64,000 nt of DNA from Oculina patagonica (taxonomy: Eukaryota). The position numbers and the translations under genes are program-made. Below, piece by piece: positions 181-61,581 of the stretch. Each line of letters begins with the position of its first letter. Within the stretch, counting starts at the first letter, position 1. Under the pieces are notes generated by a model. That model searched no databases, had not been told where the DNA came from, and saw only the letters and a list, made by a program, of their open reading frames with translations. Location of the stretch: NCBI RefSeq assembly GCF_052425735.1, contig NC_135763.1, positions 33,294,001 through 33,358,000 on the forward strand. Direction: 5' to 3'.

Positions 181-363
181 CTGGGCACAACAGCGCGTTA
201 CATTCTCGAGTCTCCAGCGAGGGACCCAGAGAGGAACAATCCACACCACCCTTGGTGTCTTTAGGGAAGGTACATTTTCGTGTTCTCTCCTGTGTCCCTC
301 CTCCGCAGGTCGCTGAGCACGATGACCAATGGGACCAATCAGAGTAGACTCCAGTGACCGGAG
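181..363 (-). CDS. Gene F exon: thrombospondin type 1 (TSP1) domain
   Basis: YSDWSHWSSCSATCGGGTQERTRKC...C...ETRECN..LCP; cag/ and /gtaag boundaries; 183 nt. Confidence 0.92.
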
Positions 364-3300
364 CTGTGGACACGAGTAAACAACGATCAAGATTTGTATT
401 TGAGGTTTCTACTCTATAGTGGTAATTTGAGTGCTAAACAATAAACCATTTCCCAATTACCCTTTGCCTCTCTATCAAAACGAGTCTACGTGCGAAACCA
501 TTCATATGAAAATGCGTTTCACCTACAGGTCCATTTTCATGCAAATCAAACTCATTTTTATTTGAATGGTTTTGAATGGTTTCCCGCGTAGTCTCGTTTT
601 AAAACAGAGTCAAAGGGTAACTTGGAAGTGGCCTGTTGCTCTGTTTCTTTGTCATTCTACGTTTCTTAAGTTGTCTTTGTTTCATTTATACGTTCCAGTA
701 TAATTACTAGTAGACTTAATTTTCCGTTATTTTAAGTCACTTAGCCCGTTAATCTAGAATATTATAAATAGTATTGTATATAGTTTTTAACTTTGTAGTT
801 TTTACAGTTTTTTGTTTAGTTTTATATAAAGGGCCACAAGTTTATTAGTATTGTACACTATTAAGTGCCACCCTCTTTAAATAAAGAGCTTTCTTTTTTT
901 ACAGACCCTTTTTGAGTGCGTCAAAAACGTGCAGGCAAAACTTAAACCGCAGTGGGAGTTGAACAAGCCCGAACGCAAGGGGGTGGGGGTGGGAAGAAAG
1001 AAACTTCTATAGACAGAGGAGGGGGTAGGCGCGCGACCGTGCAAGAGACTACCCTGTATCTTACCCGCAAATGTTGATGGCATGGGCGTGGTTCCTACTG
1101 TAGAGGAAGGCTGATATTCGTCTGACAGAGGAGTTTCTGTTCCTGCGCTTGTCCCTGATGCGTGCGTTGCGTGACCTGTAACGTGACCTTCAGTGACGGA
1201 AGTGGACTCGGATGCGGCCTGAGTTCCAGAAGTAGTCTCTTGTCTTTCGGTTGATGTGAATTTAGTTGTCTTGGGTGCTTCGGTGGTTTCTCGAGTATCG
1301 CCTGGAAGATAAAATTTAAGACTGAGTTCAAACTAAGAAAAGCGATTGCAAAGCTCATACTAGCGCTCTCAAAGAGTTCTATTAAAAATCACATCGTACA
1401 AATGAGGTAAGCTCTCCAAGCCACTCAAAGAATGGAATACTACCCACGTGGCTGGTAAACAAAGTATCTGCATGATTTTCTAAGGGCGAATTCAACGGTA
1501 CGATTTTGCCCACGATTTTTGCATGCGACACGCTTACGCCATGACTACAACACGAATCGCGTGGGGGAAATGAACCTACCACATCCTTACGAAAGACGCG
1601 TGCGCGTGTAAATGGTCTTAAGTCATGTCGTAGGCCTGTCGTAAGCTTGTGGCATGCTAGGAAGTACCGTGTAAATCGTCGGCCCTTACCGAGACAGTGT
1701 CCCCACATGCCGTCAATGTCATAGTTAGATGTTGTAGCACACCAAGGTTGATGGACATCTTTGTCGGTGCACTCAAAGTACTGGGTTCCATGATAGATAA
1801 ACGGAAACACGCAGCATGCCCCTTTACTTGTTCCGCCTTCCGTTTCCACGCAGCGCGCGTTCAGACCTGCGAACGTAAAACAGTCAGTAAGTGAGAACAA
1901 GATGCAGTTAACGATATTGTGAAAAATAATTTCTGGTGTGACCGCGCTTATATTTGAACTGGAGGTTTAGTTAAGATACCAACTTACGGCATCCCATTCA
2001 GCGAAAGTATGGACAGCAGAAGACCTTGTTGTTTTTGTTTTCATTCGGGGAAATTAGCATTTTATTGCTACTCTGTAAATCCGAATTTAAATAAAGTTTA
2101 TTGATTAATTGATATTAATTGATATTCTACTATTCATGGTGAAAGTGCCAGTCAAAAGTTTTTGAATATTATCGTCCAATCAGAAATAGCACGGGCAATC
2201 TGTTCTTGCGTCAGCTTGTCACTATGGTGATGTCATGTTGCCAAGCAACAACTATCGCGAGAATCGCAGGCTCTGTCAGTTTTTAGATGCAGACTTTCTG
2301 ATACACGATTAGGAAAAAACATAAAAAGCAGAAACGCCAAGGCCGTTTTTTCACCTTCTTTCACCGGGCACTCCGGGCAACACTTCCATCGCTTCTTTAC
2401 AGGATTACTGCAGCTGAGTTCTGGACACTCAATCAATGTACAGCGGATTTTGCCATCATCGCATTTGCATTCAGGAGTACAGGGGCCTGGTGACCAGCGC
2501 TCGCCGTGTTCATGTAAAATACCATCATAATAACAATCTGAAATAAAATAACAAATACGAAACAGTTATCAACCAATCTCATACTTGTTTACAAGATAAA
2601 TTTCTAAACAAATCGATTATATTGTCGTCTTTTAAACTAGGGTCCTCAAGCGCTTTATTTAAGTTCAGCTTCAGAGAGACAAAACTTCTTCGTGTGTCTG
2701 AATAGAAAACAAAAAACTGGAAAGATAGAAATCAGAAGAATTACAACTTACTTGCTTGTCCTGGAGGTCGTACAACCTTCGTTTCATTGGCTAACAAAAG
2801 ACGAAAGAAAGTGATATTAAATTATGTTAAAAACGCAAGTTTTCGGAGATAATATAACGTCTGTGGTTTTTTTTTCCATTTAGAAACGGGCTTCACTTTT
2901 CACTCCAATGTGCTTACGAAAAGCTTTAATTTCCTGCCAACTCAGGAAAGTTTTCATTGCCTAAATAAAAGGAACCGGTTGTTTACAAATAATGAAGTGT
3001 TCCTTTGTTCTGCTTTGTTTGCTTGCATTTTACCGTAACTGGCGCTGTCTTCGGACGGCAGCATTTTTTTGTTTCTCGATGCAGAAACAGTGAGTGATCT
3101 TAAAGGCTTGATGTAGAGCTGTTTGGTTGATCAATTGTCGTGAAACAAATTGGACAATACGAAATAGCAGTTTAAGCGAGCGCTAAAAAAGATTCAAACA
3201 ACTGAGAAATTTCTTACCATGAGTGGGTGGGGCTGTAGGTGCAACCAAACCAACTGGAGCCTGGGTTGGAGCTAAAATTGAATGTAAAGTGTTGTAAGTA

Positions 3301-6300: not shown

Positions 6301-9300
6301 GGCTGGGTTGGAAAATGACGATTGTTTTTTAGGGGGATTTATTCAAGACACTTGAATGGCAATGGTATTTTATCTACGCGCTCTCTTTTCTTCGTGAAAT
6401 AATTTTTAAATCTGCACTTTTTGCTTTATTTTGTGGTACAAACAGTCATATTGTGAACAATAATCAGCCGTGGCGATGTCACATATGACATCACGTTGTT
6501 GTTTTTGAAACACTAGAATGAACGAAATCATGTTGTTAGTTCCAATAAGTTTTAACTTTGCGTTTGAAAGCGATTCGTTTACGTTAAAACTAAAGAATGC
6601 AGGCAGCTTTGTAGCTTTTTCACCCCAAAAATCCAAGATGGCGGCCAAATTAAGAAGCGTATAGGGGAGCCAATTTAAAATTCGATTTATAAGTGAAAGC
6701 TACCGTTCCAACCTTGCTATCATACATTTTTGTGATGCTCAATAGGCAAGGATAAAGATAAGACATGTTTCGTTTGTTCCCCGAAAGTGAGCCATGAACC
6801 CAAATTTTCGGATCTCAGCTGATGGACTATCTCGTTCCCTGCAGGGTCTCCCCCTCCCTCGCACCCAAAATGGAGAGAGAGAAAGACCCTGGGAACGAGG
6901 TTGCAATCTGTTGCAGTCTGTATTGTTATGCTGTCTCCTGGTTTTCATCTTGGTTCGTTTCAACTCCATTGATCATGATTTGTATTGAGGTAAGCTTATA
7001 CATTTCCCAGCTAAGTAAGTTTTGTTGTAAGCTTAAGTCTTAATTTAACACAAGTTCGACTCGGATAATTAATAGCTGACATTGAAATTACCCATACCTT
7101 CAGTCGGCACAGTTATCTAATCCACAATCCACTTACCTTCACAGAATCCGCACTTTTTCTTGCAGTTTGTTTTCATCCATGCGTTTTCACAGCTTTCAGT
7201 CGAGTATCGACTGCATTCAGGATTATCTTTACAAACAGCTGAAAATTACAATGGAACAAAATATTACGCACGGACACCGACTGACCGACATTGCGCAGGC
7301 GATTGTTTTCTTCTTCTTCTTCTTCTCCTCGCTGCGGCATCATTTGCTCTCCTAAAGCATCATATCCCATCTCTAAGCTAATATTCTGCCTGTGTTTGCC
7401 AATGCTTTGGGCCATGATCAGCTAAAAGGCGCTAGCATTGAATTTTGCGCGCCTCGTCCGCCATGTTTGTTGTGTTGAATCCAGTCTCCTCGCAAAAAAG
7501 TGTCCAAACAGGCACGCAATGCATACACACTTCTCAGGAGAAAGAACAACAGATGTCTAAACAAATGGTTTACTTTTTAACTCAGTAATGACTACTTACG
7601 TCGGCAGAATTGGCATTTTCGTGGGCAGTTCAGTTGAACCCACTCGTCATTACACTGGTTTAAAGCGTACCGTGAACATTCACTCTTGTCATTACACCAA
7701 GGAGCTAAAACGTTATGCAAAAAAACAACGTCAAATTTATTAAAATATTTCATCATTACTTTCATTCCATTCGTTCATGGAGAGAAACAAATAAATTTAC
7801 TTTCTTAATTTCTTTTCTCAAACTGTTAAGTTGTTATTCCCATTAAGTGACAAATGGAAATTTACTACTGCAAATTCCCATTTATTTATTTTTATTTAAA
7901 AATTTGATTGAGCAGTTTTTTAATTCTTTATCCTCAAAGCAGATCTCTTTCCTTTACTGTTTATGCATTTGTGTTTAACCAGATCGCTGGAGCTACGAAT
8001 CACCATTAGTACCAAGGGCCTTCTGTCACCCTGGAAACGAAGCTACTAAACAAATCACATACACTTAATAACGCGACCTCTTTGTCTCAAAAAATCAGCA
8101 ACATCTTTTTTCTTGTTACCTTCTGGTATTTCGAGGATGGTCGTTCCATGACTCATAGAGACGTTAATATGATTTTTCGCGGGACCTTTTATCTTGACCT
8201 GAGTGGCATTTTCGTCTTCAGCTTTTATGTTAGCGGGAAGCTTCACTACAATCGTCTCCACCATGGGTGCCTTGTTTGTCGTCTCGTCTGCCAAGACCGG
8301 TTTACCATTTTCACCTTTGATGTTCACCAGCACAGGCTTTCTTGACGTCTCAAGAGATTTCGTTACTTCTGATGGTACTGTGACTGACAGCTCGGTGTAG
8401 GGTTTTTCCGTTGCCTTGTTTGTCGCTTCGTTGCTGACTTGTTGCGGCGGCGTTGCCTGAGAGGCTGTCGCTGTAAGATAAGAGAGCTTTGCTATAATTC
8501 TAGCCACAAGTTTAGCGGAACGACGGCGCGGGTCTCGGTTACTACAGTAAATCCAAGAGTACAATGCACACAATTTTACATTTCTTGAGATCTCTTGATT
8601 TTCAACCATGCACGCAAATCTTGTACGAGTAGATAACTTCCCATACCTTTGAACAGTTGCTTAGTGTATGTTATCGGTTGTTTACAAGTCTGCAATTGAA
8701 CTACTGGCGCGCACAAATTGTTATAAGTTATAGTTAGATACTGTTTCTTGTTTAGCAATGTGATTCTATCCAAAAAGCAAGGAAGAGAGTCATTACTGAC
8801 CATTGCCACATATTTTGCACTTCTTCGGGCAGTTAACTTTCAGCCAGCCTTCATTACAGTTCGCCTCTGTGTATTTAGCGCAGACAGGGTCGTCGTTACA
8901 CCACGTTTCTATGGAGAACAAGGACGTGTTACATTTAAGCATGTTACTTAACTTATTCATAATGAACCCTTAGTTCCAATATCAACATTGGACCAATCGA
9001 TGAGAAATTGTTCTTTAATAAACTTTTATGATAAGGTTGGAAACTGCTACAACTGGAAAAAAGAGAGCTTTTTCTAAGTTTGCGGCAAACCACCGGCAAT
9101 TCCCGAAGACGATACGAAAAGAAATACATCTTTATCATTTACTACACCCTTGTTGCTATAGACGTTGCTGATCCTAGCAGTATACAGGACGCGTGTCACA
9201 TATCAACCTAGTAAATGGCCCAGCTCACAACGAGTCTCTCGTAGCTCAGTTGGTTAGAGCGCCCAACCGGTATCTGGGAGGCCATGGGTTCGATTCCCGT

Positions 9301-19084: not shown

Positions 19085-19575
19085 CTATCCCGTGTAGTAT
19101 GACCCAGGATACCCGCCGTTCTGATACTGCTGTTCGTTTGAATAGTAGCTGGCCTGTCCGGCGGTGTTTTGAGCCTGTGATTCACCATACTGCTGGTACG
19201 CAGTGTTATCATACCCACTGTTTCTCTGGTAACCTGTGTTATCGTACCCAGTGTTTCTCTGGTAACCTGTGTTATCGTACCCATTGTACCCTTGAGAGGC
19301 AGTGTTGTCATTGTATCCCTGAGTGTTATAAGATGGATAGCCTCCTTGCGAGTTGCTCGCTTGATCATTGTAGGGAGCCTGGTTCTGACTCTGGTAGTAG
19401 TTTGGAGACGAGGCTGCTTGGTAACCATACGACGCCTGGTTACCCTGTGCATAGTTGTTGTACAAGTCGTTTGTAGTCTGGTTACTCATAGTCTCGTTTC
19501 CTCCTGTGGTTTGATTGGCTACGGCTGGTTGGTTCCCAGCTCCTCCCGTTACCTGTTCAGTTGCGTTCGCAGCCT
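19085..19575 (-). CDS. Gene E last coding exon: Tyr/Gln/Asn/Gly/Ser-rich low-complexity tail
   Basis: 24 Tyr in the last 125 aa; GYDNTGYQRN(T/S) tandem repeat; cacag/ acceptor; TAG stop. Confidence 0.88.
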
Positions 19576-45139: not shown

Positions 45140-45243
45140 TTAACACAGTTTACACATGCTCTTGCAGTTGGCCATCAGCCATGGGTCTGCACAGCGGTCA
45201 GCGGTATATGGTGCGCATCTGCCGTCATCAGTGCAGGTTTCAG
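45140..45243 (-). CDS. Gene B last coding exon: ShKT domain 3
   Basis: ETCTDDGRCAPYTADRCADPWLMANCKSMCKLC*. Confidence 0.9.
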
Positions 45244-46827
45244 CTGCGAACAAAAGACAAATTGGAGAATAATTAGAAAGTTTATCCAAAGTTATGTATT
45301 TGGTGATTTACAAGGACATAGCTGATCAGAAGCTGAGAGCTGAGGTACATCCAAATACATCTACAGCTACGCATAGAAAACAAATGTTCCTCTAGTTTTA
45401 ATTGAAAGACTTGCCAAAGAATTTGGAACCATTTGACTTTTTTAACTTAAAGACCAGCTACATGTGTCATTTGTGTATATCATAGGGATTTTAACGACAT
45501 ACTTTTAGTATAATTATCACAATTTAAAGATTGTAATCATGGGTGTATTAATTAGTTTTAGTGTGGTGGTTTAAAGCATCTGTACATTATTATACTTTTA
45601 CTCATAATAATATCGTAATTTACTTTTTAATAGTTAATGATTTATTATCTATTTAATTTCTCTTTGTTTTTATACTTGATTTTAATTACTGTCGTGCGCT
45701 TTATACATGAGCCTCTGGCTCGGATAGGGAGGGCAACCTCATCCCGCGTTATGTCTCTNNNNNNNNNNNNNNNNNNNNNNNNNNNNNNNNNNNNNNNNNN
45801 NNNNNNNNNNNNNNNNNNNNNNNNNNNNNNNNNNNNNNNNNNNNNNNNNNNNNNNNNNNNNNNNNNNNNNNNNNNNNNNNNNNNNNNNNNNNNNNNNNNN
45901 NNNNNNNNNNNNNNNNNNNNNNNNNNNNNNNNNNNNNNNNNNNNNNNNNNNNNNNNNNNNNNNNNAAGACTTACTGTTGGTATAGGCAGCGGTCTGGGTG
46001 GCTGAAGCATCAGGTTGAGCAACTGGGGCAGCAGCGGACTGATCTGTTGTAGCAGCAGCGGCCTCGGTAGCTGGAGCGGTGGTCTGTGCTGCGGTTGCAT
46101 CCGTCTGGGTCGCTGTAGCATCAGCCTGAGTTGCTGTAGCAGCGGTTTGTGCAGCCTGCGTGTCCCATGGAGACTGGGTCTGTGTGTCGGAGTGATATGA
46201 AGCTGTGTCCTGGGGAGCGGCTTGTGTGGTGGCAGAGGAGGACTCGGTCTGATCGGTGGCGGTCTGATCGGTGGCGGGTTGAGCGGCAGAGTCTTGTTCA
46301 GGCTTGGTTTCTTTGATTTCTTTTTTCGAGTATAAAAAATAGGTGATTTTGTAACAAGGGTAATTGGGGAATACCTGAAAGCAACCTTTAGACTCTGAAA
46401 GCGACGTAGACGAGTACTGCATGCAATGTTGTGTTTGTCTCATTCAAATGGTACACTAGGGAATGAAATAAATGCGACTTTGGAGTGGAGGTCAGAGGGG
46501 AGGAGAAGAACATGTCGACCAAAAACAACGTAGAGGAGGATGGATCGAACAGCTGGGTGACAAAGGAGGGACTGAATCGAAAGGCTGAAAGGAGAATATC
46601 AAAGCTATATTGTCTTATGGCATAGGGAGATCTAGGTGTAGGTAGGAAAAGTGAGGTTTGTATAAGATTAGAGGTTTTTGTTTGGAGCCTCTTTTGTTTG
46701 TTATTCACTTCCGCGTCGCTGCAGTAGTTTCCAGTTTCCATAACTGAGCTGGCCTTTCCTATAAGCCTGGTGGTTTCTTGGAGGTCTCCTCTCTACTACT
46801 GTTATATTACTGTTATATGCTAATAAA

Positions 46828-49800: not shown

Positions 49801-52800
49801 GCAGCATCAGGAACACCGACGGCGGGTGCAGTAGCAGCAGCAGTGGAATCTTGTGTACCGGTAGCCTGCTGTTGTGCACCGTTCTGCTGATTGGGGTCAG
49901 CAGCTTTTCCCTGGTCAACATAATGCATATTGACAGGGTGCTGCTCGGGGTATAGGAAAAGCCAGTTCCTATAATTGCCTTTGTAGTCAAAGAGGCTGTA
50001 GCTGGTTGTCGGCGGGGGTTGGTCGGCATTGGAACTTTTAGTTGGTGAATAGTCAGCTGGACGGCTGAGGAAGACAACGTCACGTCTGCCGCCATCGATA
50101 TTGTCTCGCTTGTCGACGACTTTAGAAGCGTGTTTGCTTTTGTGTTTCTTGTGTTTCATGCCAGTAACTGCATCCTTTTTGTTTCCCTTCTTGGAAATTC
50201 CGTGCTTCTTGTCCCCTTTTTTGTAATACAAGACTGCTGGAAGCTTCATGAAATCAGCGCCTACAATGTAGGTAGCCATTGCGTTAGAAATGCCTCTACA
50301 CCGCAGGGGTAAAGTTCTAGCTATGCTGGAGAGTGGTCTAGATAAACATTGAAAACATATCCGAAAAAACAAAGACACGAGAAACGAGCTGGAAGGCTAA
50401 ATAACGCGATAGGGGAGTCACCCGTGAGTATGTAGACAACAAAAACGCTCTGTTGCTCAAGACGCGTTACGCGTAGCTATGCGTGAAGACGAATATCTGC
50501 GGGTAAACTATTCCTGACGCAATATGGCACTTACCTTCATATTCACAGAGTCTGCACATTCTGGGGCAGTTCAGCTGAACCCATTCAGAAGCACAGTCCA
50601 GATCACTATACTTGACGCAATATGAGTGGTTGACGCAGAAGCTTCCTTTCGGAGCTGTGAGAAGTTTTAGAAAATGAAACGGCTTAAACTCAGGTCAAAG
50701 AGACTATATGGGTATTCGAGCAAGTGTACTAGCAACGACTTAGAGAATACCGTAAAATTCCGGTTATAAGCCCCCCGCTTATAAGCCCCCCCCGGTTATA
50801 GGCCCATCAACCTGGAAACAAAAAAATACATCCAGTTATAAGCTCCCGGATATAAGCTGATACAAGCCCTCCTCTCCCGAATGACAGTACTGAACAGGGC
50901 TAAATGTTGCATTTTTGTTTGTTTTAACTTAAAAGCGTATTTCTATCAACACTCCTGAGGCTCTTTTTGAAACGTTTTTTTCCTTCCGCTTATAAGCCCT
51001 CCCGAATATAAGCCCCTCCGCTTATAAGCCCACCCAAAAACCCTTACGAAGTTGTATAAGCCCAAGGCTTATAACCGGAATTCTACGGTACTCTCCTGCA
51101 ACGACTGCAGAAAGGCAAAGAAGGTATGGGTTACATAAAACAGATATATAAGGACAGATTTACCATTGTTTTTCTTGCTCCCACTTTTATGGACATGTTT
51201 GGATTTCTTGATAGCTGTTCAAAAAAATAAGAAGTAAAAAAGCCCAATGACTATAATCCATCTTAGCTTTTCAGAATCACAAAGACGGCAAGAAAAAAAA
51301 GTAAAATACAGTGTCGCGCTAAGTAATTGTAATCTATCTTTTTCTCCTTTTGTTTACATCAAGTACTAAAAGCGAGTACTGATCAGTAACAGCAAATTCC
51401 GATAAAAAGTCTTGCTTTTAAGTTTGGCACACGCAGCACTATCGAAAAACTAACTATCGAAAAAGTTTACTTTCTTGATTGCAAGCATTAATTTACTTGG
51501 CTGCGTTTTCGGATCTGCGCATTAATATCAGTATGGAGTTTTTTCCAGCAGTCCAATCCGAGTGTTAGGATTTTCTCTTTAAAAGTTACTTGTTTATTTA
51601 GCGGGTGAAAACCTTTTATGTCGCTGTAAGACGGCCATCATCATTTTTAGAGAACATTTTTCACAGTTTCGCGGATATCTAAATGAGCCAAACAATTACT
51701 AATCACAACTGTCATTTTCTTGAATACTCTACAAATTAAATTTATTGTGTAGCCATTCATTACTCGTGATCTCATTGAGAAAACGGGTGTTTTATTTGAA
51801 AGCTAGACGCCTTCAAATGAACTAACAAGTACCCGTGTGATTTTTGATCTTATGCTGAGAAATTCCAACAAGACCCGTAACGTTTACAGCGCCGAGCCCA
51901 AAATATAAGTCCTGTGCTTACATTTATTTTTATTTTATTTTTTTCGAATATGGTGGAGGTCAAAATGATATCTCCCAGTTGATGACTCTGTATTCTCATG
52001 CACCTATCTGGTTCACAATGTATTTAAATTATAAGGAGTATTTAAATCGTGATCACTGTCACGAAAAAGGGCTATAGTCTACTTAGTAGGATTTTCTTTT
52101 TTTATGTTTTTTTTTTAAAGAACTGAACTTAAATAGAACTTTTTATTTCGAATTGTGAAATTATCTATGCTCTATATCAACCTTGAAAAGGTTTCTTGCC
52201 TCTTGTTTGGCCGGACGCTATTCAAAATAATCTCGTAGAACATCTGAAAGCGTTTCTGGATTTTAAACATATCCTGGCTGTTCCTTTTTAGTCAGTCGAA
52301 CTCTGGACGAAAAAGCGAGTGCAATGTGGCGTTTAAAGGCCCGCATCTCAGGTCACTGCGCAACACTGAGCTACTGAGCAATCGTATTTTTCTCCACTTA
52401 ATCACAAAAGAAATTGACTTAGGCATGGTTTTAATGCCAGTTAGTCTGAGCAGTTTATAGAGAGGCAGTGTAAACAGACACATTTTCTGGTCGACTTTCC
52501 CAAGATATAATGTGTGTATTTTTACAAACTATGTCCTCCGAGATGTGTTGTTTTTGTTAAGGTTAAAGGCGAGAACAGGTATCACTGATCGGTTTATGTA
52601 AACTTAAACGGGTGCTGTTCTAAGAAAATGGCAAAACCGCCTTCATAAATTATTCAAAGCGATGAGAAAGAAACCATTTCGCCTGTCGAACAATAAAATT
52701 GCAATACATGAAGAATTCCTGTATGAAACCCTGCGCTTCAACGATCGGAGACAACTTTATGGCCGATTGGCGTTGAAGCTCAGAGCTGAAACTTTTCACT

Positions 52801-53041
52801 GTGTTTTTGCCACTTGAATTAACCTTATATACCATTAAATATATCAGTTATATAGACCAACGCAAGAAAGTAAAACAATAAAGTCAATAAATCCGATAAT
52901 TGAATTAAATAAGTCCAAATTGAAGCGCGTCAGTGGATAAATGTCGTATTTACCTTTAGCTTCCAAGAGTCCGTACTGTAGTCCCAAGAAAAGTAATACA
53001 AATAGCGCCTTTATGCCGTATCCTGTCGTCGTCAACTTCAT
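45140..53041 (-). CDS. Gene B: secreted mosaic protein, SP - K/H-rich - ShKT - K/H and A/Q-rich - SQNSS repeats plus 'GxG' module - ShKT - 'KP' module - T/A/Q-rich - ShKT; about 887 aa
   Basis: Join (minus): 52954-53041, 51164-51214, 50535-50654, 49439-50260, 48474-49046, 47852-47971, 46928-47368, 45975-46319, 45140-45243 (TAA). All phase 1. Acceptors at 50260 and 46319 are less certain and an N-gap lies in the last coding intron. 3'UTR intron 44837-45131. Confidence 0.82.
45759..45965. other. Assembly gap (N run)
   Basis: Ns, in the last coding intron of gene B. Confidence 1.
45975..46319 (-). CDS. Gene B exon: T/A/Q/D low-complexity region
   Basis: KETKPEQDSAAQPATDQTATDQ...AAYTN; /gtaagt donor; weak aaag/ acceptor. 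Confidence 0.78.
46474..46600 (+). mobile_element. Decayed RTE-like LINE 3' ORF fragment
   Basis: ATLEWRSEGRRRTCRPKTT*RR resembles the RTE C-terminal W.P.G.R.RGRP..TW motif. Confidence 0.55.
46828..46878 (+). repeat. (GAT)n microsatellite directly after AATAAA (retroposon-tail-like)
   Basis: taataaa(atg)n. Confidence 0.85.
46928..47368 (-). CDS. Gene B exon: 'KP' beta-rich domain
   Basis: KPLVAKYTLRVKPKLLNGVPQTQEIRIMPP...KPMIENIEIDVP...; 441 nt. Confidence 0.88.
47852..47971 (-). CDS. Gene B exon: ShKT domain 2
   Basis: PYVFNVYCDDLYKDCAYGYSNCNDTWWQINCPKRCNLC; 120 nt. Confidence 0.9.
48474..49046 (-). CDS. Gene B exon: SQNSS(L/F) repeats, 'GxG' module, CCx7CxxC motif
   Basis: GNITSQNQSLVEQLSQNSSLSQNSSFSQNASLSQNSSL...HRLHLVNSEESSKMQGRFNPNGASVTLSGAGTVDLTS...CCKKQPRPEGCKKCP; 573 nt. 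Confidence 0.85.
49439..50260 (-). CDS. Gene B exon: K/H-rich block, aromatic segment, A/Q/P-rich block, N-glycan sequon cluster
   Basis: Within ORF 49425-50378; ttgtag/ acceptor preceded by ctaac; /gtaatg donor; 822 nt. Confidence 0.83.
50535..50654 (-). CDS. Gene B exon: ShKT domain 1
   Basis: CVNHSYCVKYSDLDCASEWVQLNCPRMCRLC; 120 nt. Confidence 0.9.
50750..51088. mobile_element. TA-flanked MITE (Tc1/mariner-pogo-like) with internal TATAAGCCC repeats
   Basis: ta|ccgtaaaattccggttataagcc ... ggcttataaccggaattctacgg|ta. Confidence 0.82.
51164..51214 (-). CDS. Gene B micro-exon (AIKKSKHVHKSGSKKNN)
   Basis: 51 nt, aacag/ and /gtaaat, phase 1-1. Confidence 0.75.
52954..53041 (-). CDS. Gene B first coding exon: signal peptide
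   Basis: MKLTTTGYGIKALFVLLFLGLQYGLLEA/K, /gtaaat. Acceptor at 53050 implies an upstream 5'UTR exon (donor about 53597). Confidence 0.85.
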
Positions 53042-54518: not shown

Positions 54519-54680
54519 NNNNNNNNNNNNNNNNNNNNNNNNNNNNNNNNNNNNNNNNNNNNNNNNNNNNNNNNNNNNNNNNNNNNNNNNNNNNNNNNNN
54601 NNNNNNNNNNNNNNNNNNNNNNNNNNNNNNNNNNNNNNNNNNNNNNNNNNNNNNNNNNNNNNNNNNNNNNNNNNNNNNNN
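54519..54680. other. Assembly gap (N run)
   Basis: Ns. Confidence 1.
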
Positions 54681-54854
54681 CAGTAAATCTTTATTGTGCC
54701 TTACACTCCAAAGGGAGGTATTGGTCTAGTTACAATAAAGGTGTTATAGCAACTATGCTAACAAAATTAATTACTTAATAACAAACAATGAAATTACAAT
54801 GCAAACGTTTACGGTAATTATTGGACTATTACTTATACAACTATTACTTAACTA

Positions 54855-54928
54855 CTGACTGACTGACTGACTGACTGACTGACTGACTGACTGACTGACT
54901 GACTGACTGACTGACTGACTGACTGACT
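54855..54928. repeat. (CTGA)n microsatellite
   Basis: About 18 perfect units. Confidence 0.95.
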
Positions 54929-55819: not shown

Positions 55820-56161
55820 TTAGTGGCCCTTTGTCTTTGGCTTGTCGTGTTCAGTTTGCACTTTCTTAATTTGTTTGACTTTCTTTTCGATTTTATCATT
55901 GTTCACTTTCTTGGCCACTTTCTTCTGCACAACTTTTGGCTTTGCATCCTTCACGAGCTTCACGTGCATCGCCTTCCCGGGAGCGTCGTTAAACTTGATT
56001 GGCTGGTTGACCAGCTTAGCGACCACGGGCTCGCCTCCTGGGTCCGTGTCAAGTCTGATTGGCTTGTCTGGTTTGTCCTCACTCTTGACTTCCCCTGAAG
56101 CTTTATCGTCATCGTCATCATCTTCATCTTCATCATGTGAGCTTCCTTCTCCACTAACATC
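55820..56161 (-). CDS. Gene A last coding exon: acidic SG site, duplicated PIx..PG..KLV motif, Lys-rich tail
   Basis: DVSGEGSSHDEDEDDDDDDKASGE...KPIRLDTDPGGEPVVAKLVNQPIKFNDAPGKAMHVKLVKD...KTKGH*. Confidence 0.87.
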   Translation of the reverse strand, partial: DVSGEGSSHDEDEDDDDDDKASGEVKSEDKPDKPIRLDTDPGGEPVVAKLVNQPIKFNDAPGKAMHVKLVKDAKPKVVQKKVAKKVNNDKIEKKVKQIKKVQTEHDKPKTKGH

Positions 56162-59100
56162 CTGGTCAAAATCATAAAAATCATGCTGTTATTAGACAGT
56201 GAACAGTTTCAAAAGCGTATTGCCTTTGATCAAAATTAACGACAGCCTTTGTCGCAATCAAAGTTATCTTAAAGGTTTTTACACCGCCGACCGGTTAGCT
56301 CAGTTAGTAGAGCGACGGAGGGCCAACTTTTGCATCGCTGGTTAAATCAACTCTTAAGCCCGGGCTAAACAAGGATGAGAGTCGATGAGAGTTCAAACTC
56401 TCACTCTCGTTTGGCATAGTACTCTCATGCACTCTCATCGACTCTCATGCGCTCTCATCGACTTTGAACGTGCTCAGATTTTTCGTGTGAGTCGATGAGA
56501 GTTTGACGGACTCTTGTTCTCGTTTGGCCCGAGTTGATGATAGTCGATGAGAGTTGAAGAAGCTCTCATGAAAGTCAACTCTCGTCCTTGTTTGGCCCGG
56601 GCTTTAAAAATGCCGACTAGCGCGGATTTAGCTATTTCACTTACACTAGTATCGTCATCCTCGTCACTGTTATCATCAGCTTCGTCGTCATCATCATCAT
56701 TGTTATCGTCATTATCTTCACTGTGGGTTTCTTCTTCTTTGGGCACTGGCTTCTCATCATGAGCAACTTCCGGTATCAACACAGGTTTGTCCTCCTTCTT
56801 GTGTTGTTTGACTTTAGCTGCAGCTTGTTTCACGGCATCTTTTGCCTTCTTGGTCATTTTCTTAAGGACTTTTTTCAGTTGCTTTGTCTTCACTACGTGT
56901 TTGGTCTTGTCCGCTTGCTGCTTTGTGTTAGCATTAGTGAAATGTCTCTTTTTACCCATGGTGATGTGAGAGTTGCCCTGACGTTCTGAAAGTTAAAACG
57001 TTCAGTTTAATTTTTTTTTTAAACTTACTTTATGCCTGACACTAAAATCTTTTCAGCGCCAAACTTGAAATGTACATTTTTGTTGCTGCTCTTACATACA
57101 GTTTCAAATTGTCGTTCTGAAAATTATTTATTATTATTATCTCCCGATGGATGATAGTTTTCATTCTCATCACTTATCTGTTTGACTCAACCGCGGTCAA
57201 ACGACAGAAATATGCAAAAAATAAGACAAGTACTGCAAAGATAAGGTTTTAATTTTCACAGTTCAAAGTTCGATACATAACCGGCATCCTAAGGGTTTAC
57301 TAAGTTTTTTGGAGCTTTACTAAAAACGTTCTACGTGTTTGAAAAAAGCGATATGCGGACTTGTAGCTACTTGTCGGCGCCATTTGTCAGAGCACCTTTG
57401 GTTCGGATGCGAAACATTTAAAAAGTAAAAACACTCGTTTACCTGAGGTAATGGGATTATGCTTTCACTCGGCAAGTATTTTTATCTATCCTTGCTCGTA
57501 CTAACACTTCAATACGAACAAAAAACGCCGAATTGGAAAGAAAAGTTGCCTGAGACGTTTGACCGCGGTGAACTGTTTGACACTGTACTGACAATGTAAT
57601 GAGAAATGATTTTATCCCCGTTCACATTTAAAAGAGTTTGCCACACTTAAGAGTCCTTTTACTAAAAGTTACAAATGTAATATTCACCCATACTCAAAAC
57701 AATAACTCGTGTTCTCTTGTGAGGATCGTCTCTTTACGTTTAGTTTGAAGTTTTACTTTTTGTGTCTTTATTTTTTTCTTAATAGTTAAAGTTGACGTGA
57801 GAAAACACGGCATTACATGTTATGAAAGGATGACAGGACATGAATTAACGTGATGTGAGTGGCATAAAATGACCTGACTTGACCTGACATGGCTAGACAT
57901 GGCACGATATGACATGACTTTGATATGATAAGACATGACGTGACGTGAACTGAGCTGAGCTGAACTGACCTAGCTTGATCTGAACTGACGTGACGTGACG
58001 TGACATGACATGACATGACATGACCTGACCTGACTTGACATGACATGACATGACATGACATGACATGACGTGACGTGACGTGACTGAGCTGAGCTCTGAC
58101 CTAGCCTGATTTGAACTGACGTGATGTTACATGACATGATACGACGTGACGTGATGATTAAAACAAACACCGTCATATGGCTAAACGCATAAATGAGTCA
58201 CAAAAGTTAATTTTGCACTGACGTAGCTGAGAAGATGATGTAGCTAGCAATTCTATTTTCTTCATACTTACCGTAACCACACGCTCCGCATTTGCTTTTA
58301 CAAGTCTCCCTGACCCAGCGGACCATGCAAGCTGACGCGGCAAACTTCTTACACACATCTAAATCTTGACAGCCAATGAATACACCATAAGGAACTAAAG
58401 AGGGATACGAAAAATATGTTTCTTTCATATGTCAGCCAAAATTGATCTTCAGTATGCTAGTGAAATACCTGGCCTATTCATTTATTCGTTCATTTATTCA
58501 TTTATTCATCGACTTACTTATTAACTTATTTAATGTACTGACTTATTTATTGACTTACTTAGTGTATTGACTTACTTATTGACTTACTTAGTGTACTGAG
58601 TTACTTATTGACTCACGTGGTGTACTGACTTACACTTATTGACTAACTTGGTGTATTGACTTACTTATTGACTTACTTAGTGTATTGACTTACTTTTTGA
58701 CTCACTTGGTGCATTAACTTACTTAATGACTTACTCAGTCTACTGAGTTACGTATTGACTCACTTGGTGCATTAACTTACTTATTGACTAACTAAGTGTA
58801 CCGAGTTACGTATTGACTCACTTGGCGCATTAACTTACTTATTGACTTACTTAGTGTACTGAGTTATGTATTGACTTACTTGGTGTATTGACTTACCTAG
58901 TGTATACTGACTTGCTTATCAAGTTAGTGTATTAACTGACTTATTAACTTTCTTAGTGTACTGACTTACTCGTTGACTTACTCGGAGTATTGACTTACTT
59001 ATTGACTTACTTAGTATGTTGACTGACTTACTTATTGACTCACTTGGTGTATTGACTTCCTTAGTGTACTGCATGACTTATTTGCTTGTTGAACTGACTT

Positions 59101-61581
59101 ACTTTACGTAATGACTTACTGTCACAAAGTTTGCAGCTCTTTCTGCAGTTTTTCTGCGTCCATACATCCCTACACTGTCCGGTTGCGGCATAATTCTTGC
59201 AGTATGGTTGGTAATCGTCACATGGAAACAATTTCGCTGCAAACAATAGAGTTTGTTGTGAACTTCAATTATCGTTAATTTTGCCATCGCTATCTATTCT
59301 TGATACCAGACCCCTTCTCTTTTGCGAATGAAAGAGATTCTAGCTGGGGTCCTGAGGTCCCCGTATACACCAACTAATATTATTTCAGTAGTTAAACCGG
59401 GTTTGTATATGTTATGAAAAGCATTCAAAATTGTTAATTTAGTGGTGGTCATGTGTCAGTTATGAATTCAAATCACTGACAACAAAACTCCTCACCTTTT
59501 TCTTCTTTGGTTAATTTTAGGTCATCCATAGCTTTCTCTTGGGCTAAGTAAAAAAAATTAAAATAATTAATCATTGTCGAAAGTAAGTCTGTGTGTGCTT
59601 TGGCTTTGAATTCGCATGCCGGGCTATTTAATTGGTCCAAGAAGCTTGCGAAACTTGGCTAGTAGCCATTAACAACGCACGTGCTTTTTGTTCAGCCAAT
59701 CAAGAGAAAAATCGAAGCCAATCGAGGGTCGGTTCGATTTGTTGTGGCTGTGGTACCTTGTGACCTCGTGTGAGGTCCTTTACAAACCTTCACCTGCCCT
59801 GTGAGCAAATATTTTTAATCTTTTGTTTTTGCTTGAGTTTTAAAAGCTATTTGCATTTGCTTTGGTTTTGCATTGCTACGCTTAGTGATTGGCTTAAAAA
59901 TCTCACGCCACTCTCTCAGCCAATCAGAAATAAAACCAAAAGCAACTGTGACTTGCTCGCACACGTTTTCCCGCGCTTTCCGCTGGCTACATGTATTTGC
60001 TTCGAGTTTTGATTGGTTCACTGGTTTCTCTGTGTGTTTTGTAAGAGGGCAGAGTTATTACTTTGGTTTTCGTTTAACGACATTCAATTGAAACCACTTT
60101 ATTTTTACCTACCTGTTTTTGGCTTGCTTGCTACAGGCATTACTAGCGCCGCTGTGAAGCACAAGAAATAAAATCGTTAACTAAACTTAAGTTAAGTTTT
60201 GTGTTATTTTGGCTGCGGCTGTTTTGAAACTGCGAGTAATCAAGGATTTGATTACAATAAAAGAAATCCGGTTATCCGGGACATTAGAGGTACGTGTACT
60301 TAACATTTTCAACAACCGTACGTTGAAAATATCAAGTTTAAAGAATCAGAGAGCATAAATTGATTATACCTGCCATCGTCGGTGGCCTGGGTTTGTTATC
60401 GGCTGCCTTGCCTCCAACAACGAATGTTGCCGGTCCTATAACACCAAAAAATTGCGTATTTCATCACTACGTGTTACAGATATGGATAGGATGTGGTTCA
60501 ATTTCACCCCTAGTACAATCTGGCATTTTCTTTTATGTTATATTTGTTATCATATATTGCCATACACGTGCACCAAAACAAAAGAAAATACCAATTTATA
60601 CCAAGGGTAAAGACACAACACATTCGATACATTAAAGGGATCATTAAATCATCGCAAGCTGACCTGGCGGAGGTCCTTGTACAAGAGCCCCTGGTTCCTG
60701 TGCCCCTGTGTTTCCCTGAGGCGCATGCAAGCTCATTTTGACACCATTAACCTTGATTTCTTAAAAAATAAGAGAAAATTTGCCATTAATTCGAGAGGAA
60801 GAAAAGTGAATGGATGATCCAACTGAAAAAAACGTTTATTTGTATATGCAATTTACTTAAGATCCTGTGAATTAAGCTGTCTTTAATTAATCAATAGTAA
60901 CTGTTTCTTCAAAGAACTCTGAGAAAGTTTTTTTAACCTTCCCAAGGGTTATGTTAACAGCATTTTTTTCACAATTGCGAACGCCTGCTTTTGTAATACG
61001 TGGCTAGTTCTTTGATCGAAAGCTTACCTGGTAACTTTTTCCCTCCTTTTCCAAGAACCATGGCAAAAACTGAAAATAAATCATATTAGTGGTGCCGTGA
61101 GTGAACTTCCTGTATGGATAGTGCTACAGTATTCAGTCTGCAGCACAGTTAGTTTAGATAAGTGATTTCAAAGACCGGACCAACAGCCTGGTAAGCTAAT
61201 GTTGGTTAAATGTGTTTGAAGAAAATCGACTGAATTTAAATGATGGCGTTTTAATATGAGCAGGGACCACTCATTCGATTCGTTCGTGGAATCCACCTGG
61301 AAGGAAGGAAAGTGCAAAGCCTAAGCTCGAGCTGGCTGGCGAGGAGTTGTCAATGGCCTATACGCTATCTGGAGCAACGGGCCTACGTTAGTATTTAGCT
61401 ATTTCTGCATGGCCTTAATTACTGAGGGTGGGGTGGGTGGGTCAAATGAGATAGATGTACAACATAGCAGCTGTGGCAGAGGTTTCCCGCCTTCGCAAAG
61501 CGTACCTGTGTGTTGTTGCTGAGCATAAACACAGCACGTGATTGACAGCACAGCAGCCAATAGGAGCTGTCGTCTGTCCAT
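55820..61581 (-). CDS. Gene A: secreted protein, SP - four micro-exons - 2x ShKT - Lys-rich/Asp-rich/Lys-rich charge blocks; about 397 aa
   Basis: Join (minus): 61506-61581, 61028-61069, 60370-60435, 60113-60151, 59496-59543, 59120-59236, 58272-58394, 56645-56985, 55820-56161 (TAA). Frame continuous, 1194 nt. AATAAA at 55411-55416. Confidence 0.83.
56358..56603. mobile_element. TTAA-flanked MITE with gatgagagt repeats
   Basis: ttaa|gcccgggctaaacaagga ... tccttgtttggcccgggct|ttaa. Confidence 0.75.
56645..56985 (-). CDS. Gene A exon: Lys-rich then Asp-rich block
   Basis: ERQGNSHITMGKKRHF...KKVLKKMTKKAK...EDNDDNNDDDDDEADDNSDEDDDTS; phase 1-0. Confidence 0.87.
57830..58158. repeat. Pentanucleotide simple repeat (TGACA/TGACG/TGACC)n
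   Basis: Read directly; produces spurious SCHVM ORFs. Confidence 0.92.
58272..58394 (-). CDS. Gene A exon: ShKT domain 2
   Basis: PYGVFIGCQDLDVCKKFAASACMVRWVRETCKSKCGAC; 123 nt. Confidence 0.9.
58488..59105. repeat. Degenerate minisatellite (TTGACTTACTTAGTGTA-like)
   Basis: Fills the intron between the two ShKT exons of gene A. Confidence 0.9.
59120..59236 (-). CDS. Gene A exon: ShKT domain 1
   Basis: CDDYQPYCKNYAATGQCRDVWTQKNCRKSCKLC; 117 nt. Confidence 0.92.
59496..61069 (-). CDS. Gene A run of four micro-exons (61028-61069, 60370-60435, 60113-60151, 59496-59543)
   Basis: VFAMVLGKGGKKLP / GPATFVVGGKAADNKPRPPTMA / AALVMPVASKPKT / AQEKAMDDLKLTKEEK; 42, 66, 39 and 48 nt, each AG..GT and phase 1-1. 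Confidence 0.7.
61506..61581 (-). CDS. Gene A first coding exon: signal peptide
   Basis: MDRRQLLLAAVLSITCCVYA/QQQHT, /gtacgc. Acceptor at 61591 implies a 5'UTR exon (donor about 62764). Confidence 0.85.

What the first reader, a model, noticed from the sequence alone, without database searches (positions are those of the whole stretch)
181..61581. Cluster of six co-oriented, exon-shuffled secreted mosaic proteins: candidate undescribed extracellular-structure system
Seen in sequence: six consecutive minus-strand genes, each opening with a signal-peptide exon and none showing a TM segment or enzyme domain. They are not simple tandem paralogs. Each has a different architecture, but they are interlinked by shared modules: ShKT in A, B, C, F; vWC+FN2 in E, F; the 'KP' module in B, C (traces in A, E, F); the 'GxG' module in B, D. 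Their low-complexity blocks are chemically complementary: Tyr-rich (E), His-rich (D, B), Gln-rich (E, B, C), Lys-rich and Asp-rich (A). Established knowledge: Tyr/DOPA, His-metal, Gln-Lys transglutaminase and charge coacervation chemistries build mussel byssus, sandcastle-worm cement and cuticles. Inference: the locus encodes co-expressed subunits of one secreted material, for example a larval/polyp adhesive, cnida or spirocyst matrix, gamete-bundle coat, or tissue-skeleton anchoring matrix.
Basis: partly seen in the sequence, partly recalled or inferred. Interest (0 to 1): 0.9.

Follow-up and report, generated by a model that had tools for sequence, protein, structure and literature searches.

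The report
Coral cluster of secreted modular proteins
A stony-coral (Oculina patagonica) locus holds six neighbouring genes for secreted, mostly disordered proteins assembled from shuffled small domains, two of them unnamed and found only in corals, sea anemones and soft corals; they are real, transcribed and largely kept together in other corals, but whether they build one common material is untested.

Summary
The observation largely holds. The window matches Oculina patagonica: NCBI's uncharacterized protein LOC144656666 maps to gene B at 100% over nine exons. Both assembly gaps lie outside coding sequence: one in intron 8 of B, nine bases after the donor, and one between A and B.

Six co-oriented minus-strand genes are present. 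Each has an N-terminal hydrophobic leader and no TM segment or enzyme domain. They carry 11 ShKT modules (A, B, C, F), VWC+FN2 pairs (E, F), one TSP1 (F), the 'KP' module (B, C) and the 'GxG' module (B once, D twice). Every intron checked is phase 1: eight in B from the RefSeq product and five in F from RNA contigs. That is the classic signature of exon shuffling.

The claimed KP "traces" in A, E and F are not supported.

KP occurs in only 26 of 1.84 billion protein clusters, all named ones anthozoan. It has no Pfam family and no structural relative.

B-C-D-E-F order is kept in one related coral, B-C-D in a second and E-F in a third. A's adjacency is not confirmed.

My reading is a tandemly duplicated, exon-shuffled anthozoan family of secreted matrix- or mucus-type glycoproteins. 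The "one material" idea is neither shown nor excluded. Other notes from this scan on the same window cover its parts.

The parts
61506..61581 (-). Gene A exon 1: ATG at 61581, hydrophobic leader, phase-1 donor after 61506 (predicted)
   Evidence: region is held in RNA libraries at the share expected for its exons
59120..59236 (-). Gene A exon 2: ShKT module 1 (117 nt, phase 1-1)
   Evidence: Pfam ShK 26.8 bits, above cut-off; splice sites
58272..58394 (-). Gene A exon 3: ShKT module 2 (123 nt, phase 1-1)
   Evidence: 6-Cys pattern and BLASTP to other ShKT exons; no Pfam hit at E 0.01
56645..56985 (-). Gene A exon 4: Lys-rich then Asp-rich block (boundaries predicted)
55820..56185 (-). Gene A last exon: Asp-rich then Lys-rich block, ends at stop; phase-0 join to exon 4 is a guess
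54519..54680 (.). Assembly gap 2, intergenic between A and B
52954..53041 (-). Gene B exon 1: signal peptide
   Evidence: 100% match to P0043 (Oculina patagonica LOC144656666)
51164..51214 (-). Gene B exon 2: Lys/His-rich linker
50535..50654 (-). Gene B exon 3: ShKT module 1
   Evidence: Pfam ShK 19.0 bits
49439..50260 (-). Gene B exon 4: Lys/His-rich start, conserved Y/F/W block, Ala/Gln-rich low complexity
   Evidence: conserved to sea anemones
48474..49046 (-). Gene B exon 5: long form (predicted acceptor 49046) = Ser/Gln-rich block + whole GxG module; RefSeq short form starts at 48647 and keeps only the second half of GxG
   Evidence: long form as in Montipora P0041
47852..47971 (-). Gene B exon 6: ShKT module 2
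46928..47368 (-). Gene B exon 7: KP module
45975..46319 (-). Gene B exon 8: Thr/Ala/Gln-rich block; donor GTAAGT directly follows
45759..45965 (.). Assembly gap 1, inside intron 8 of B, 9 nt after the donor
45140..45243 (-). Gene B exon 9: C-terminal ShKT module 3 and stop
43594..43666 (-). Gene C exon 1: signal peptide
   Evidence: same N-terminus in full-length orthologs P0006, P0044
41562..41993 (-). Gene C exon 2: KP module
41026..41340 (-). Gene C exon 3: Ser/Thr/Gln/Ala/Pro-rich block
40376..40491 (-). Gene C exon 4: C-terminal ShKT module and stop
36931..37012 (-). Gene D exon 1: signal peptide followed by His/Lys run
   Evidence: conserved in two other corals
32777..33103 (-). Gene D exon 2: GxG module copy 1
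31726..32010 (-). Gene D exon 3: Pro/Lys/His-rich block
30778..31034 (-). Gene D exon 4: GxG module copy 2, His/Lys tail, stop (acceptor weak)
26061..26160 (-). Gene E exon 1: predicted leader; ends '...SDG' like F's leader, strong phase-1 donor
   Evidence: present in related coral (but at intron-level identity)
23515..23703 (-). Gene E exon 2: VWC domain
   Evidence: Pfam VWC 42.7 bits
22967..23137 (-). Gene E exon 3: FN2 domain
   Evidence: Pfam fn2 57.6 bits
21395..22002 (-). Gene E: Ala/Ser/Pro-rich exon (3' boundary unresolved)
   Evidence: conserved ORF in related corals
19801..20354 (-). Gene E: Pro/Gln-rich exon with 24-nt repeats (boundaries unresolved)
19085..19575 (-). Gene E last exon: Tyr/Asn/Gln/Gly-rich tail and stop
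16007..16076 (-). Gene F exon 1: predicted signal peptide
   Evidence: an RNA contig runs 194 nt 5' of exon 2 beyond the laid stretch
13169..13279 (-). Gene F exon 2: ShKT module 1
   Evidence: Pfam ShK 21.7 bits; RNA joint 13169|12603
11563..12603 (-). Gene F exon 3: 347-codon conserved but disordered block
   Evidence: RNA joints; 37 database ORFs 51-92% identical; pLDDT 38
9432..9473 (-). Gene F micro-exon (42 nt)
   Evidence: RNA joints 11563|9473 and 9432|8908 in two runs
8801..8908 (-). Gene F exon 5: ShKT module 2
   Evidence: Pfam ShK 17.7 bits; RNA joints
8120..8470 (-). Gene F exon 6: Lys/Pro-containing block, only marginally KP-like
   Evidence: RNA joints
7600..7704 (-). Gene F exon 7: ShKT module 3
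   Evidence: Pfam ShK 19.4 bits; RNA joint 8120|7704
7137..7238 (-). Gene F: ShKT module 4 (predicted boundaries)
   Evidence: Pfam ShK 23.6 bits
3515..3622 (-). Gene F: ShKT module 5 (predicted; weak donor)
2355..2537 (-). Gene F: VWC domain
   Evidence: Pfam VWC 46.4 bits
1690..1866 (-). Gene F: FN2 domain
   Evidence: Pfam fn2 60.8 bits
1065..1301 (-). Gene F: Thr/Ser-rich exon
181..363 (-). Gene F: TSP1 repeat; ends in a phase-1 donor, so the gene continues beyond the window
   Evidence: Pfam TSP_1 45.6 bits

Best explanation
The locus is a tandem cluster of paralogous, exon-shuffled genes of an anthozoan-restricted family of secreted, non-enzymatic, largely disordered modular glycoproteins.

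Each gene is a chain of symmetrical phase 1-1 exons. The chain runs from a leader exon, through low-complexity spacer exons, to small disulfide-knotted binding modules (ShKT, VWC, FN2, TSP1). Two further modules are anthozoan-only: KP, a predicted beta-rich domain of about 100 residues, and GxG, about 45 residues.

The cluster grew by local duplication and cassette exchange:
- C is a copy of B's 3' half, made in the stony-coral stem lineage.
- E and F share leader, VWC and FN2.
- B and D share GxG.
- Soft corals still carry KP, ShKT, VWC and FN2 in one protein. This suggests one ancestral gene.

Inferred mechanism, not shown: the products are secreted and act as multivalent extracellular scaffolds of matrix, mucus or glycocalyx type. 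Flexible spacers display modules that bind other matrix components. FN2 is a collagen/gelatin binder elsewhere. VWC and TSP1 are matrix and growth-factor binders elsewhere.

The genes may well work in related settings, but their clustering is explained by descent and does not by itself show a common material.
For: - **Shown: identity.** Gene B is identical to a RefSeq product of Oculina patagonica, and all 8 of its introns are phase 1.
- **Shown: gene F.** F is one gene. RNA contigs from two to three runs give five spliced joints, all phase 1, including a 42-nt micro-exon.
- **Shown: exon lengths.** Every predicted internal module exon has a length divisible by three, except A's fourth exon, whose guessed downstream join is phase 0.
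- **Shown: Pfam domains.** Pfam gives ShK, VWC, fn2 and TSP_1 and nothing enzymatic.
- **Shown: ShKT modules.** All 11 share near-identical Cys spacing and an invariant Trp.
- **Shown: paralogy.** KP E 2e-61, VWC 1e-26, FN2 6e-19, GxG 3.6e-5 and hhalign 96%.
- **Shown: KP distribution.** 26 of 1.84 billion clusters. All named ones are anthozoan: Acropora, Montipora, Porites, Pocillopora, Oculina, Nematostella, Actinostola, Xenia, Dendronephthya.
- **Shown: KP tree.** Octocoral, then anemone, then separate stony-coral B and C clades.
- **Shown: soft-coral architecture.** Xenia and Dendronephthya proteins carry KP+ShKT+VWC+FN2 together.
- **Shown: synteny.** Order kept in three other coral assemblies.
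- **Shown: transcription.** A and B stretches have words in RNA libraries; F shows spliced contigs.
- **Inferred.** Secretion is inferred from leader hydrophobicity. Extracellular scaffold function is inferred from the known roles of the named domains.
Against: - No expression data at cell-type level and no proteomic detection.
- No ShK, VWC or FN2 terms or KP peptide turned up in the text supplements of the Oculina skeletal proteome paper. That is a very shallow check.
- Exon joins in E's 3' half and A's last intron are unverified.
- Signal peptides were judged by hydrophobicity only.
- The KP model is of moderate confidence (pLDDT 68, core about 80).
Confidence: 0.6

Rival explanations
1. 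The six genes are co-expressed subunits of one secreted material (adhesive, cnida or spirocyst matrix, gamete-bundle coat, or tissue-skeleton anchor). Its low-complexity blocks cross-link through complementary chemistries: Tyr/DOPA, His-metal, Gln-Lys, and charge.
For: - Same strand and short intergenic distances (1.5-4.6 kb).
- Order B-C-D-E-F kept in a related coral.
- All products are leader-bearing and non-enzymatic.
- A, B and F are detected in the same bulk RNA libraries.
Against: - Shared modules are explained by duplication and shuffling.
- Bulk libraries say nothing about cell type.
- No cross-linking enzyme gene lies in the window.
- In one coral D is followed by a Kelch gene, with no E within 9 kb, and nothing like A lies within 6.8 kb upstream of B.
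- B-type genes exist in anemones and KP proteins in soft corals. Whether these sit with partner genes could not be looked at, because no genomic context could be fetched for them.
Confidence: 0.15
2. Cnidocyte or gland-cell secretory cargo. The proteins would be structural or accessory components of cnidocysts, or ShKT-type venom or defence precursors.
For: A review of the Stylophora cell atlas states that most ShK-domain genes are highly expressed in cnidocytes and gland cells (PMC8913943; PMC8162421). From my own knowledge, cnidocyst proteomes are rich in matrix-type domains.
Against: - No minicollagen Cys-rich motif and no collagen triplets.
- No Lys-Tyr/Phe pair in the third loop of any of the 11 ShKT modules.
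- No dibasic processing site in front of the terminal ShKT of B or C.
- These are large spacer-rich proteins, unlike peptide toxins.
Confidence: 0.12
3. Calicoblast products of the skeletal organic matrix. The Asp-rich A and the stony-coral-specific copies (C, perhaps D) would be the prime candidates.
For: - A has Asp runs, as acid-rich coral skeletal proteins do.
- The C-type KP clade contains only stony-coral sequences, with the anemone KP sequences branching outside it.
[quoted passage not shown] Its relation to gene A was not testable here.
Against: - The family predates aragonite skeletons, since it is present in anemones and soft corals.
- No match of terms or of a KP peptide in the Oculina skeletal proteome supplements.
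- The Acropora millepora B ortholog's cluster carries no skeletal-protein name.
Confidence: 0.08

Closest known systems
Soft-coral proteins Xenia LOC124444299 (XP_046850837.1) and Dendronephthya 'paternally-expressed gene 3 protein-like' (P0026, P0051)
   Same: They carry a KP module (about 35% identical), then ShKT, VWC and FN2, flanked by Ser/Thr/Gln-rich low complexity. The order ShKT-VWC-FN2 is the same as in gene F.
   Different: All modules sit in one protein. There is no TSP1, no GxG and fewer ShKT. They are uncharacterized, so they give no function.
Orthologs of gene B: Acropora LOC114951055 / LOC141884532, Montipora foliosa, and Nematostella XP_032236476 (auto-named 'mediator of RNA polymerase II subunit 15')
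   Same: They have the same order of conserved N-terminal block, ShKT, KP, Gln/Thr/Ala-rich spacer and C-terminal ShKT.
   Different: Names are automatic and misleading, driven by Gln-rich composition. None has been studied. In the anemone sequences seen here (two Nematostella isoforms, 625-665 aa, and a partial 620-aa Actinostola product) I found no GxG motif.
[quoted passage not shown]
   Same: Six-Cys ShKT modules are attached to mucin-like spacers in secreted proteins. Protein-language look-alikes of B are nematode ShKT proteins (score 0.80, a lead only).
   Different: The relation to the Stylophora protein could not be tested because no sequence was at hand. The modules here lack a Lys-Tyr/Phe pair in their third loop, where, by my recollection of the ShK toxin, its channel-blocking Lys-Tyr pair sits.
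Exon-shuffled extracellular matrix genes of animals (phase 1-1 module exons)
   Same: All 13 verified introns are phase 1, and the domain or spacer units checked coincide with single exons.
   Different: Here shuffling also moves low-complexity spacers and two lineage-restricted modules.
Mussel byssus and foot proteins, and sandcastle-worm cement
   Same: These are sets of secreted low-complexity proteins with Tyr-, His-, Lys- or acid-rich composition.
   Different: There is no evidence for DOPA, phosphoserine, metal binding or co-secretion. E's tail is Asn/Gln/Tyr/Gly-rich rather than Lys/Tyr-rich. No modifying enzyme is nearby. The resemblance is by composition only.
Cnidocyst structural proteins (minicollagens, NOWA, cnidoin, spinalin)
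   Same: They are secreted, cnidarian-restricted and partly low-complexity.
   Different: The defining minicollagen Cys-rich motif and Gly-X-Y repeats are absent.

Membership tests
ShKT domain (Pfam PF01549) | About 35-residue module with six Cys in the C-C-C-C(x3)C(x2)C arrangement, scoring at or above Pfam's cut-off (20.9 bits) | tested here: met
   - All 11 modules have loop lengths 5-7 / 6-8 / 8-9 / 3 / 2.
- Three are above cut-off (26.8, 21.7, 23.6 bits).
- Three are just below (19.0, 17.7, 19.4 bits).
- Five have no hit at E 0.01 but are BLASTP-similar to the others.
ShK-type potassium-channel toxins | Small processed peptide with a functional Lys-Tyr pair in the loop before the fourth Cys | tested here: not met
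   No K[YF] in that loop in any of the 11 modules. The modules are embedded in proteins of about 310 to more than 900 residues, and no dibasic site precedes the terminal modules of B or C.
VWC domain (PF00093) | Score above 27.6 bits over the full model | tested here: met
   E scores 42.7 bits and F 46.4 bits, over model positions 1-57 of 57.
Fibronectin type II domain (PF00040) | Score above 22.2 bits over the full model | tested here: met
   E scores 57.6 bits and F 60.8 bits, over model positions 1-42 of 42.
Thrombospondin type 1 repeat (PF00090) | Score above 21.6 bits | tested here: met
   F exon 181-363 scores 45.6 bits.
Gel-forming mucins | VWD-C8-TIL assemblies and a C-terminal cystine knot flanking Pro/Thr/Ser domains | tested here: not met
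   No VWD, C8 or CTCK hit in any exon scanned. Only a sub-threshold TILa overlap with VWC was seen. Ser/Thr/Pro-rich spacers are present.
Minicollagen / cnidocyst wall proteins | Cys-rich motif CxxxCxxxCxxxCxxxCC and a short Gly-X-Y tract | tested here: not met
   Zero pattern matches among all ORF pieces of 30 aa or more in the window.
DOPA / His-metal adhesive protein sets (byssus, tube-worm cement) | Post-translational DOPA or phosphoserine, metal coordination, and co-secretion from one gland | not testable with these tools
   Only composition is visible. No tyrosinase or peroxidase gene is in the window.
Coral skeletal organic matrix proteins | Peptides recovered from cleaned skeleton | tested here: inconclusive
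   No ShK, VWC or FN2 term or KP peptide in the text supplements of the Oculina skeletal proteome paper. Protein lists could not be matched by sequence.
KP-module family (unnamed, defined here) | About 100-residue Cys-free module with the conserved KP...VKPK...GVPQ.QEI.IMPP...KPL..LKQ...IE.I.I.VP core | tested here: met
   - B and C hit the family profile at E 1e-54.
- F exon 8120-8470 does not (E 4.8).
- A: no KP hit; E's A/S/P exon: control level.

The most novel reading that the evidence does not exclude
The cluster (at least B-F) is a conserved, co-regulated gene battery. Its products would assemble into one anthozoan-specific extracellular structure, with the two unnamed modules acting as dedicated self-assembly or partner-binding domains: KP, a predicted beta-rich module with no structural relative, and GxG. 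This would be a new class of animal biomaterial proteins.
Probability: 0.15. Interest if true: 0.75.

Novelty: new variant of a known kind. Interest (0 to 1): 0.45.

Why it matters
The locus is a clean, well-resolved example of matrix-type gene birth by phase-1 exon shuffling plus tandem duplication in an early-branching animal lineage. It includes a dated duplication: C arose from B in the stony-coral stem.

It also defines at least two domain families (KP and GxG) that are restricted to Anthozoa. For KP, no Pfam model, structural relative or paper turned up here; GxG has no Pfam hit either. The genes are annotated only as 'uncharacterized' or carry misleading automatic names.

If the products turn out to mark one cell type or structure (mucus, adhesive, cnidocyst or skeleton interface), they would give coral biologists new markers and candidate structural proteins. 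If not, the locus remains a useful case study of how low-complexity spacers and small binding modules are recombined.

Tried and rejected
1. **F as two genes.** I suspected this because of a signal-like ORF at 10452-10517 and a stop right after the big exon that is conserved in three species. I rejected it. RNA contigs splice the big exon through a 42-nt micro-exon to the next ShKT exon. The 'conserved stop' lies inside the donor consensus. The ORF's 77% conservation equals the intron background with that species.
2. **KP 'traces' in A, E and F.** Profile searches do not support them.
3. **ESM Atlas look-alikes.** For KP the best score was 0.89 with bacterial hypotheticals, below the trust level. 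For B the search only re-found ShKT proteins.
4. **Fold searches of the KP model.** These gave nothing specific:
   - PDB by Foldseek: best E 0.58.
   - VIA wide search: best Z 3.1.
   - Atlas: TM no higher than 0.58 on a small PEGA-like sandwich.
   - AlphaFold DB clusters: beyond a 428-aa 'ShKT domain-containing protein' 70% identical over the KP stretch (E 8e-10), evidently the same family, nothing below E 0.1.
5. **Genomic context for NCBI proteins.** Oculina, Pocillopora and Nematostella proteins were not on record. Anemone and soft-coral synteny therefore could not be tested.
6. **Search with the Xenia protein.** It found only one other soft-coral protein, not E or F orthologs.
7. **Literature.** Searches by accession and automatic names gave nothing. 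The Nematostella matrisome paper could not be linked to these genes.
8. **Structure of F's big exon.** It is predicted disordered.
9. **A's synteny in the closest relative.** The last fetched locus ends 1.7 kb upstream of B, which is too short to decide.

Full report
**Source and gaps**

The window is 39% G+C with two N runs, at 45759-45965 and 54519-54680. A profile of the KP module led to a 754-residue NCBI protein, 'uncharacterized protein LOC144656666 [Oculina patagonica]' (P0043). It maps to the minus strand in nine blocks without a single mismatch. My nine-exon join translates exactly to it. The window therefore is, or is nearly identical to, the O. patagonica genome, and gene B is that locus.

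Exon 8 of B ends at 45975 and is followed by GTAAGTCTT, after which the Ns begin. Exon 9 starts at 45243, and the RefSeq product joins them in frame. Gap 1 is therefore intronic and does not break the reading frame as far as can be seen. Gap 2 lies in AT-rich sequence between A's stop and B's ATG. No ORF, domain or conserved block touches it.

**Gene models**

All eight introns of B are phase 1. Using that rule, with GT-AG sites and the open frames, I obtained clean models for the other genes.

| Gene | Model | Status |
|---|---|---|
| C | 4 exons, 311 aa | Same start and end as full-length orthologs P0006 and P0044 |
| D | 4 exons, 316 aa | Predicted |
| A | 5 exons, 340 aa | Last intron guessed as phase 0 |
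| E | 5' half: leader, VWC, FN2 | 3' exon boundaries unresolved |
| F | Long chain of exons | Runs off the window at a phase-1 donor at 181 |

My one read-laying run went to 7550-13400, to test whether F is one gene or two. RNA contigs from two to three runs showed these spliced joints: 13169|12603, 11563|9473, 9432|8908, 8801|8470 (8466 in one species) and 8120|7704. All are GT..AG on the minus strand and all fall at the predicted phase-1 sites.

This revealed a 42-nt micro-exon. One 2711-nt contig continues 1522 nt further 3'.

The stretches of A and B are held by RNA libraries. For A and for B's best run the shares fit the exon fraction (A 0.13-0.27; B up to 0.53, which fits the long form of exon 5).

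Leaders were judged by hydrophobicity only. They look standard for A, B, C, D and F, and less so for E. No TM-like stretch occurs after residue 30 in the A-D proteins and the B, E and F exons scanned.

**Modules**

Pfam results:
- ShK in six exons: three above the curated cut-off and three just under.
- VWC at 42.7 and 46.4 bits.
- fn2 at 57.6 and 60.8 bits.
- TSP_1 at 45.6 bits.
- Nothing else, in particular no enzyme domain.

A regular expression for the six-Cys ShKT pattern finds 11 matches, all on the minus strand and none on the plus strand. Their loop lengths are almost identical and a Trp in the third loop is invariant. None has a Lys-Tyr/Phe pair in its third loop, where, from memory, the ShK toxin carries its Lys-Tyr pair.

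All-against-all BLASTP of ORF pieces within the window:
- KP in B against C: 63% over 150 aa, E 2e-61.
- VWC in E against F: 51%, E 1e-26.
- FN2 in E against F: 53%, E 6e-19.
- GxG in B against D: 34% over 59 aa, E 3.6e-5.

With orthologs from other corals added, a profile-profile comparison of B-type and D-type GxG segments gives 96% probability. I picked those segments by motif, so this figure is somewhat flattering.

The KP profile hits only B and C (E 1e-54). F's exon 8120-8470 reaches E 4.8 (hmmsearch) and P 0.03 (hhalign, 1.5% probability). A's exons and E's A/S/P-rich exon behave like controls.

The composition claims are correct.

**The KP module**

A profile search of 1.84 billion cluster representatives found only 26 proteins. 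Those with names come from these taxa:
- Stony corals: Acropora, Montipora, Porites, Pocillopora, Oculina.
- Sea anemones: Nematostella, Actinostola.
- Soft corals: Xenia, Dendronephthya.

All are 'uncharacterized' or carry automatic names driven by Gln-rich composition. There is no Pfam family.

With a 29-row alignment, AlphaFold2 gives an all-beta core of about 90 residues (block pLDDT 61-86, mostly about 80; overall 68; pTM 0.56). Fold searches find no relative:
- Foldseek against PDB: best E 0.58.
- VIA wide search: best Z 3.1.
- Atlas: only generic small beta-sandwiches.
- AlphaFold DB clusters: apart from a 428-aa 'ShKT domain-containing protein' 70% identical over the KP stretch, evidently a family member, nothing below E 0.1.

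A tree of KP modules places soft-coral sequences apart and the two anemones outside the stony corals. Stony-coral sequences split into a B clade and a C clade, each holding both complex and robust corals (C clade 95/94, B clade 85/88). C therefore arose from B's 3' half (KP, spacer, terminal ShKT) in the stony-coral stem.

The soft-coral proteins combine KP, ShKT, VWC and FN2 in one chain. This makes a single ancestral gene for the B/C and E/F lineages plausible. That is an inference.

**Synteny**

Walking along contigs of three ENA coral assemblies of unstated species gave the following.

| Assembly | Identity to window | Order found |
|---|---|---|
| ERZ25067872 | Exons 84-90% at the DNA level; introns also align at 70-80% | B, C, D, E, F, same order and strand |
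| ERZ25071797 | About 50-79% protein identity | B, C, D |
| ERZ25067557 | About 58% | E followed by F |

In ERZ25071797, an intronless BTB-Kelch gene follows D, with no E within 9 kb. The 6.8 kb upstream of B holds no A-like exon and no ShKT pattern.

A's adjacency could not be judged in the closest species, because the last locus ended 1.7 kb upstream of B. Context for NCBI genomes, including anemone and soft coral, was not retrievable.

**Interpretation**

- **Shown:** a conserved tandem cluster of transcribed genes for leader-bearing, Cys-module-plus-spacer proteins. It was built from phase 1-1 exon cassettes and is tied together by paralogy.
- **Inferred:** the products are secreted and act as multivalent extracellular scaffolds.
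- **Neither supported nor excluded:** Paralogy explains the shared modules. Bulk RNA co-occurrence is uninformative. No modifying enzyme is nearby. Part of the cluster is not syntenic in one coral.

Published statements place most Stylophora ShK-domain genes in cnidocytes and gland cells, and two in calicoblasts. [quoted passage not shown] I could not test whether that protein is related to gene A.

Hallmarks of cnidocyst wall proteins are absent. A shallow look at the Oculina skeletal proteome supplements found nothing.

Other first-stage notes of this scan on the same window describe KP, GxG, E's tail and the B/C relation. My tests agree with them. Further notes report ShKT-cassette clusters elsewhere in this genome (unchecked). 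If true, ShKT sharing is weak evidence for a functional link.

**Verdict**

The exceptions are the KP traces and some unverified joins.
- The thing itself is a new variant of a known kind: an exon-shuffled secreted matrix-type gene family with two undescribed, lineage-restricted modules.
- Interest is moderate.

Noticed in passing
window 9234-9310 (+), inside an intron of gene F: A tRNA-like element (Rfam tRNA 45.9 bits; ARAGORN Thr-GGT). RNA-contig depth here is 4,000-20,000, against about 30 on F's exons in the two best runs, with many different flanks. It is probably a tRNA-derived SINE family. A second high-depth repeat lies at about 12450-12841.
   Followed up: partly
window 9432-9473 (-): A 42-nt micro-exon of gene F, invisible to ORF scanning. 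It was found only through spliced RNA contigs in two runs.
   Followed up: yes
window 48474-49046 (-): B's exon 5 has two acceptors. The RefSeq isoform uses 48647, which cuts the GxG module in half. A predicted phase-1 acceptor at 49046 would add a Ser/Gln-rich block and the whole module, as in the 931-aa Montipora isoform. The best RNA run's word share (0.53) fits the long form.
   Followed up: partly
window 49439-50260 (-), first third: A third unnamed conserved block in B, an aromatic-rich stretch after the first ShKT.
   Followed up: no
window 11563-12603 (-): F's 347-codon exon is conserved at 51-92% in 37 database ORFs from coral assemblies, yet it is predicted fully disordered (pLDDT 38). 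It contains three spaced I-x-I-S-F repeats.
   Followed up: partly
L005 15064-16869 (ENA ERZ25071797 ctg28866): In this coral an intronless 601-aa BTB-BACK-Kelch gene sits 3.8 kb downstream of gene D, where the window has gene E. It may be a retrogene insertion or a rearrangement.
   Followed up: no
window 8120-8150 (-) versus soft-coral KP modules: The end of F's exon (…HGTTILEIPE) resembles the motif that opens soft-coral KP modules (…NHATTYLELPK). This may be a remnant of a lost KP module. It is not significant.
   Followed up: partly
window 10452-10517 (-): A signal-peptide-like ORF with a phase-1 donor lies inside F's long intron. The F transcripts seen do not use it. One run shows trace depth nearby, so an alternative start is not excluded.
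   Followed up: yes
window 58511-59068 and 57986-58084: Introns of gene A hold a 29/87/116-nt tandem array of about 550 nt and a (TGACA)20 microsatellite. (ACTG)19 lies at 54854-54928, next to gap 2.
   Followed up: no
window 63708-63998 (-): An open frame ending in an acidic tail at the window's right edge. It may be the last exon of a further upstream minus-strand gene. It has no Pfam hit.
   Followed up: no
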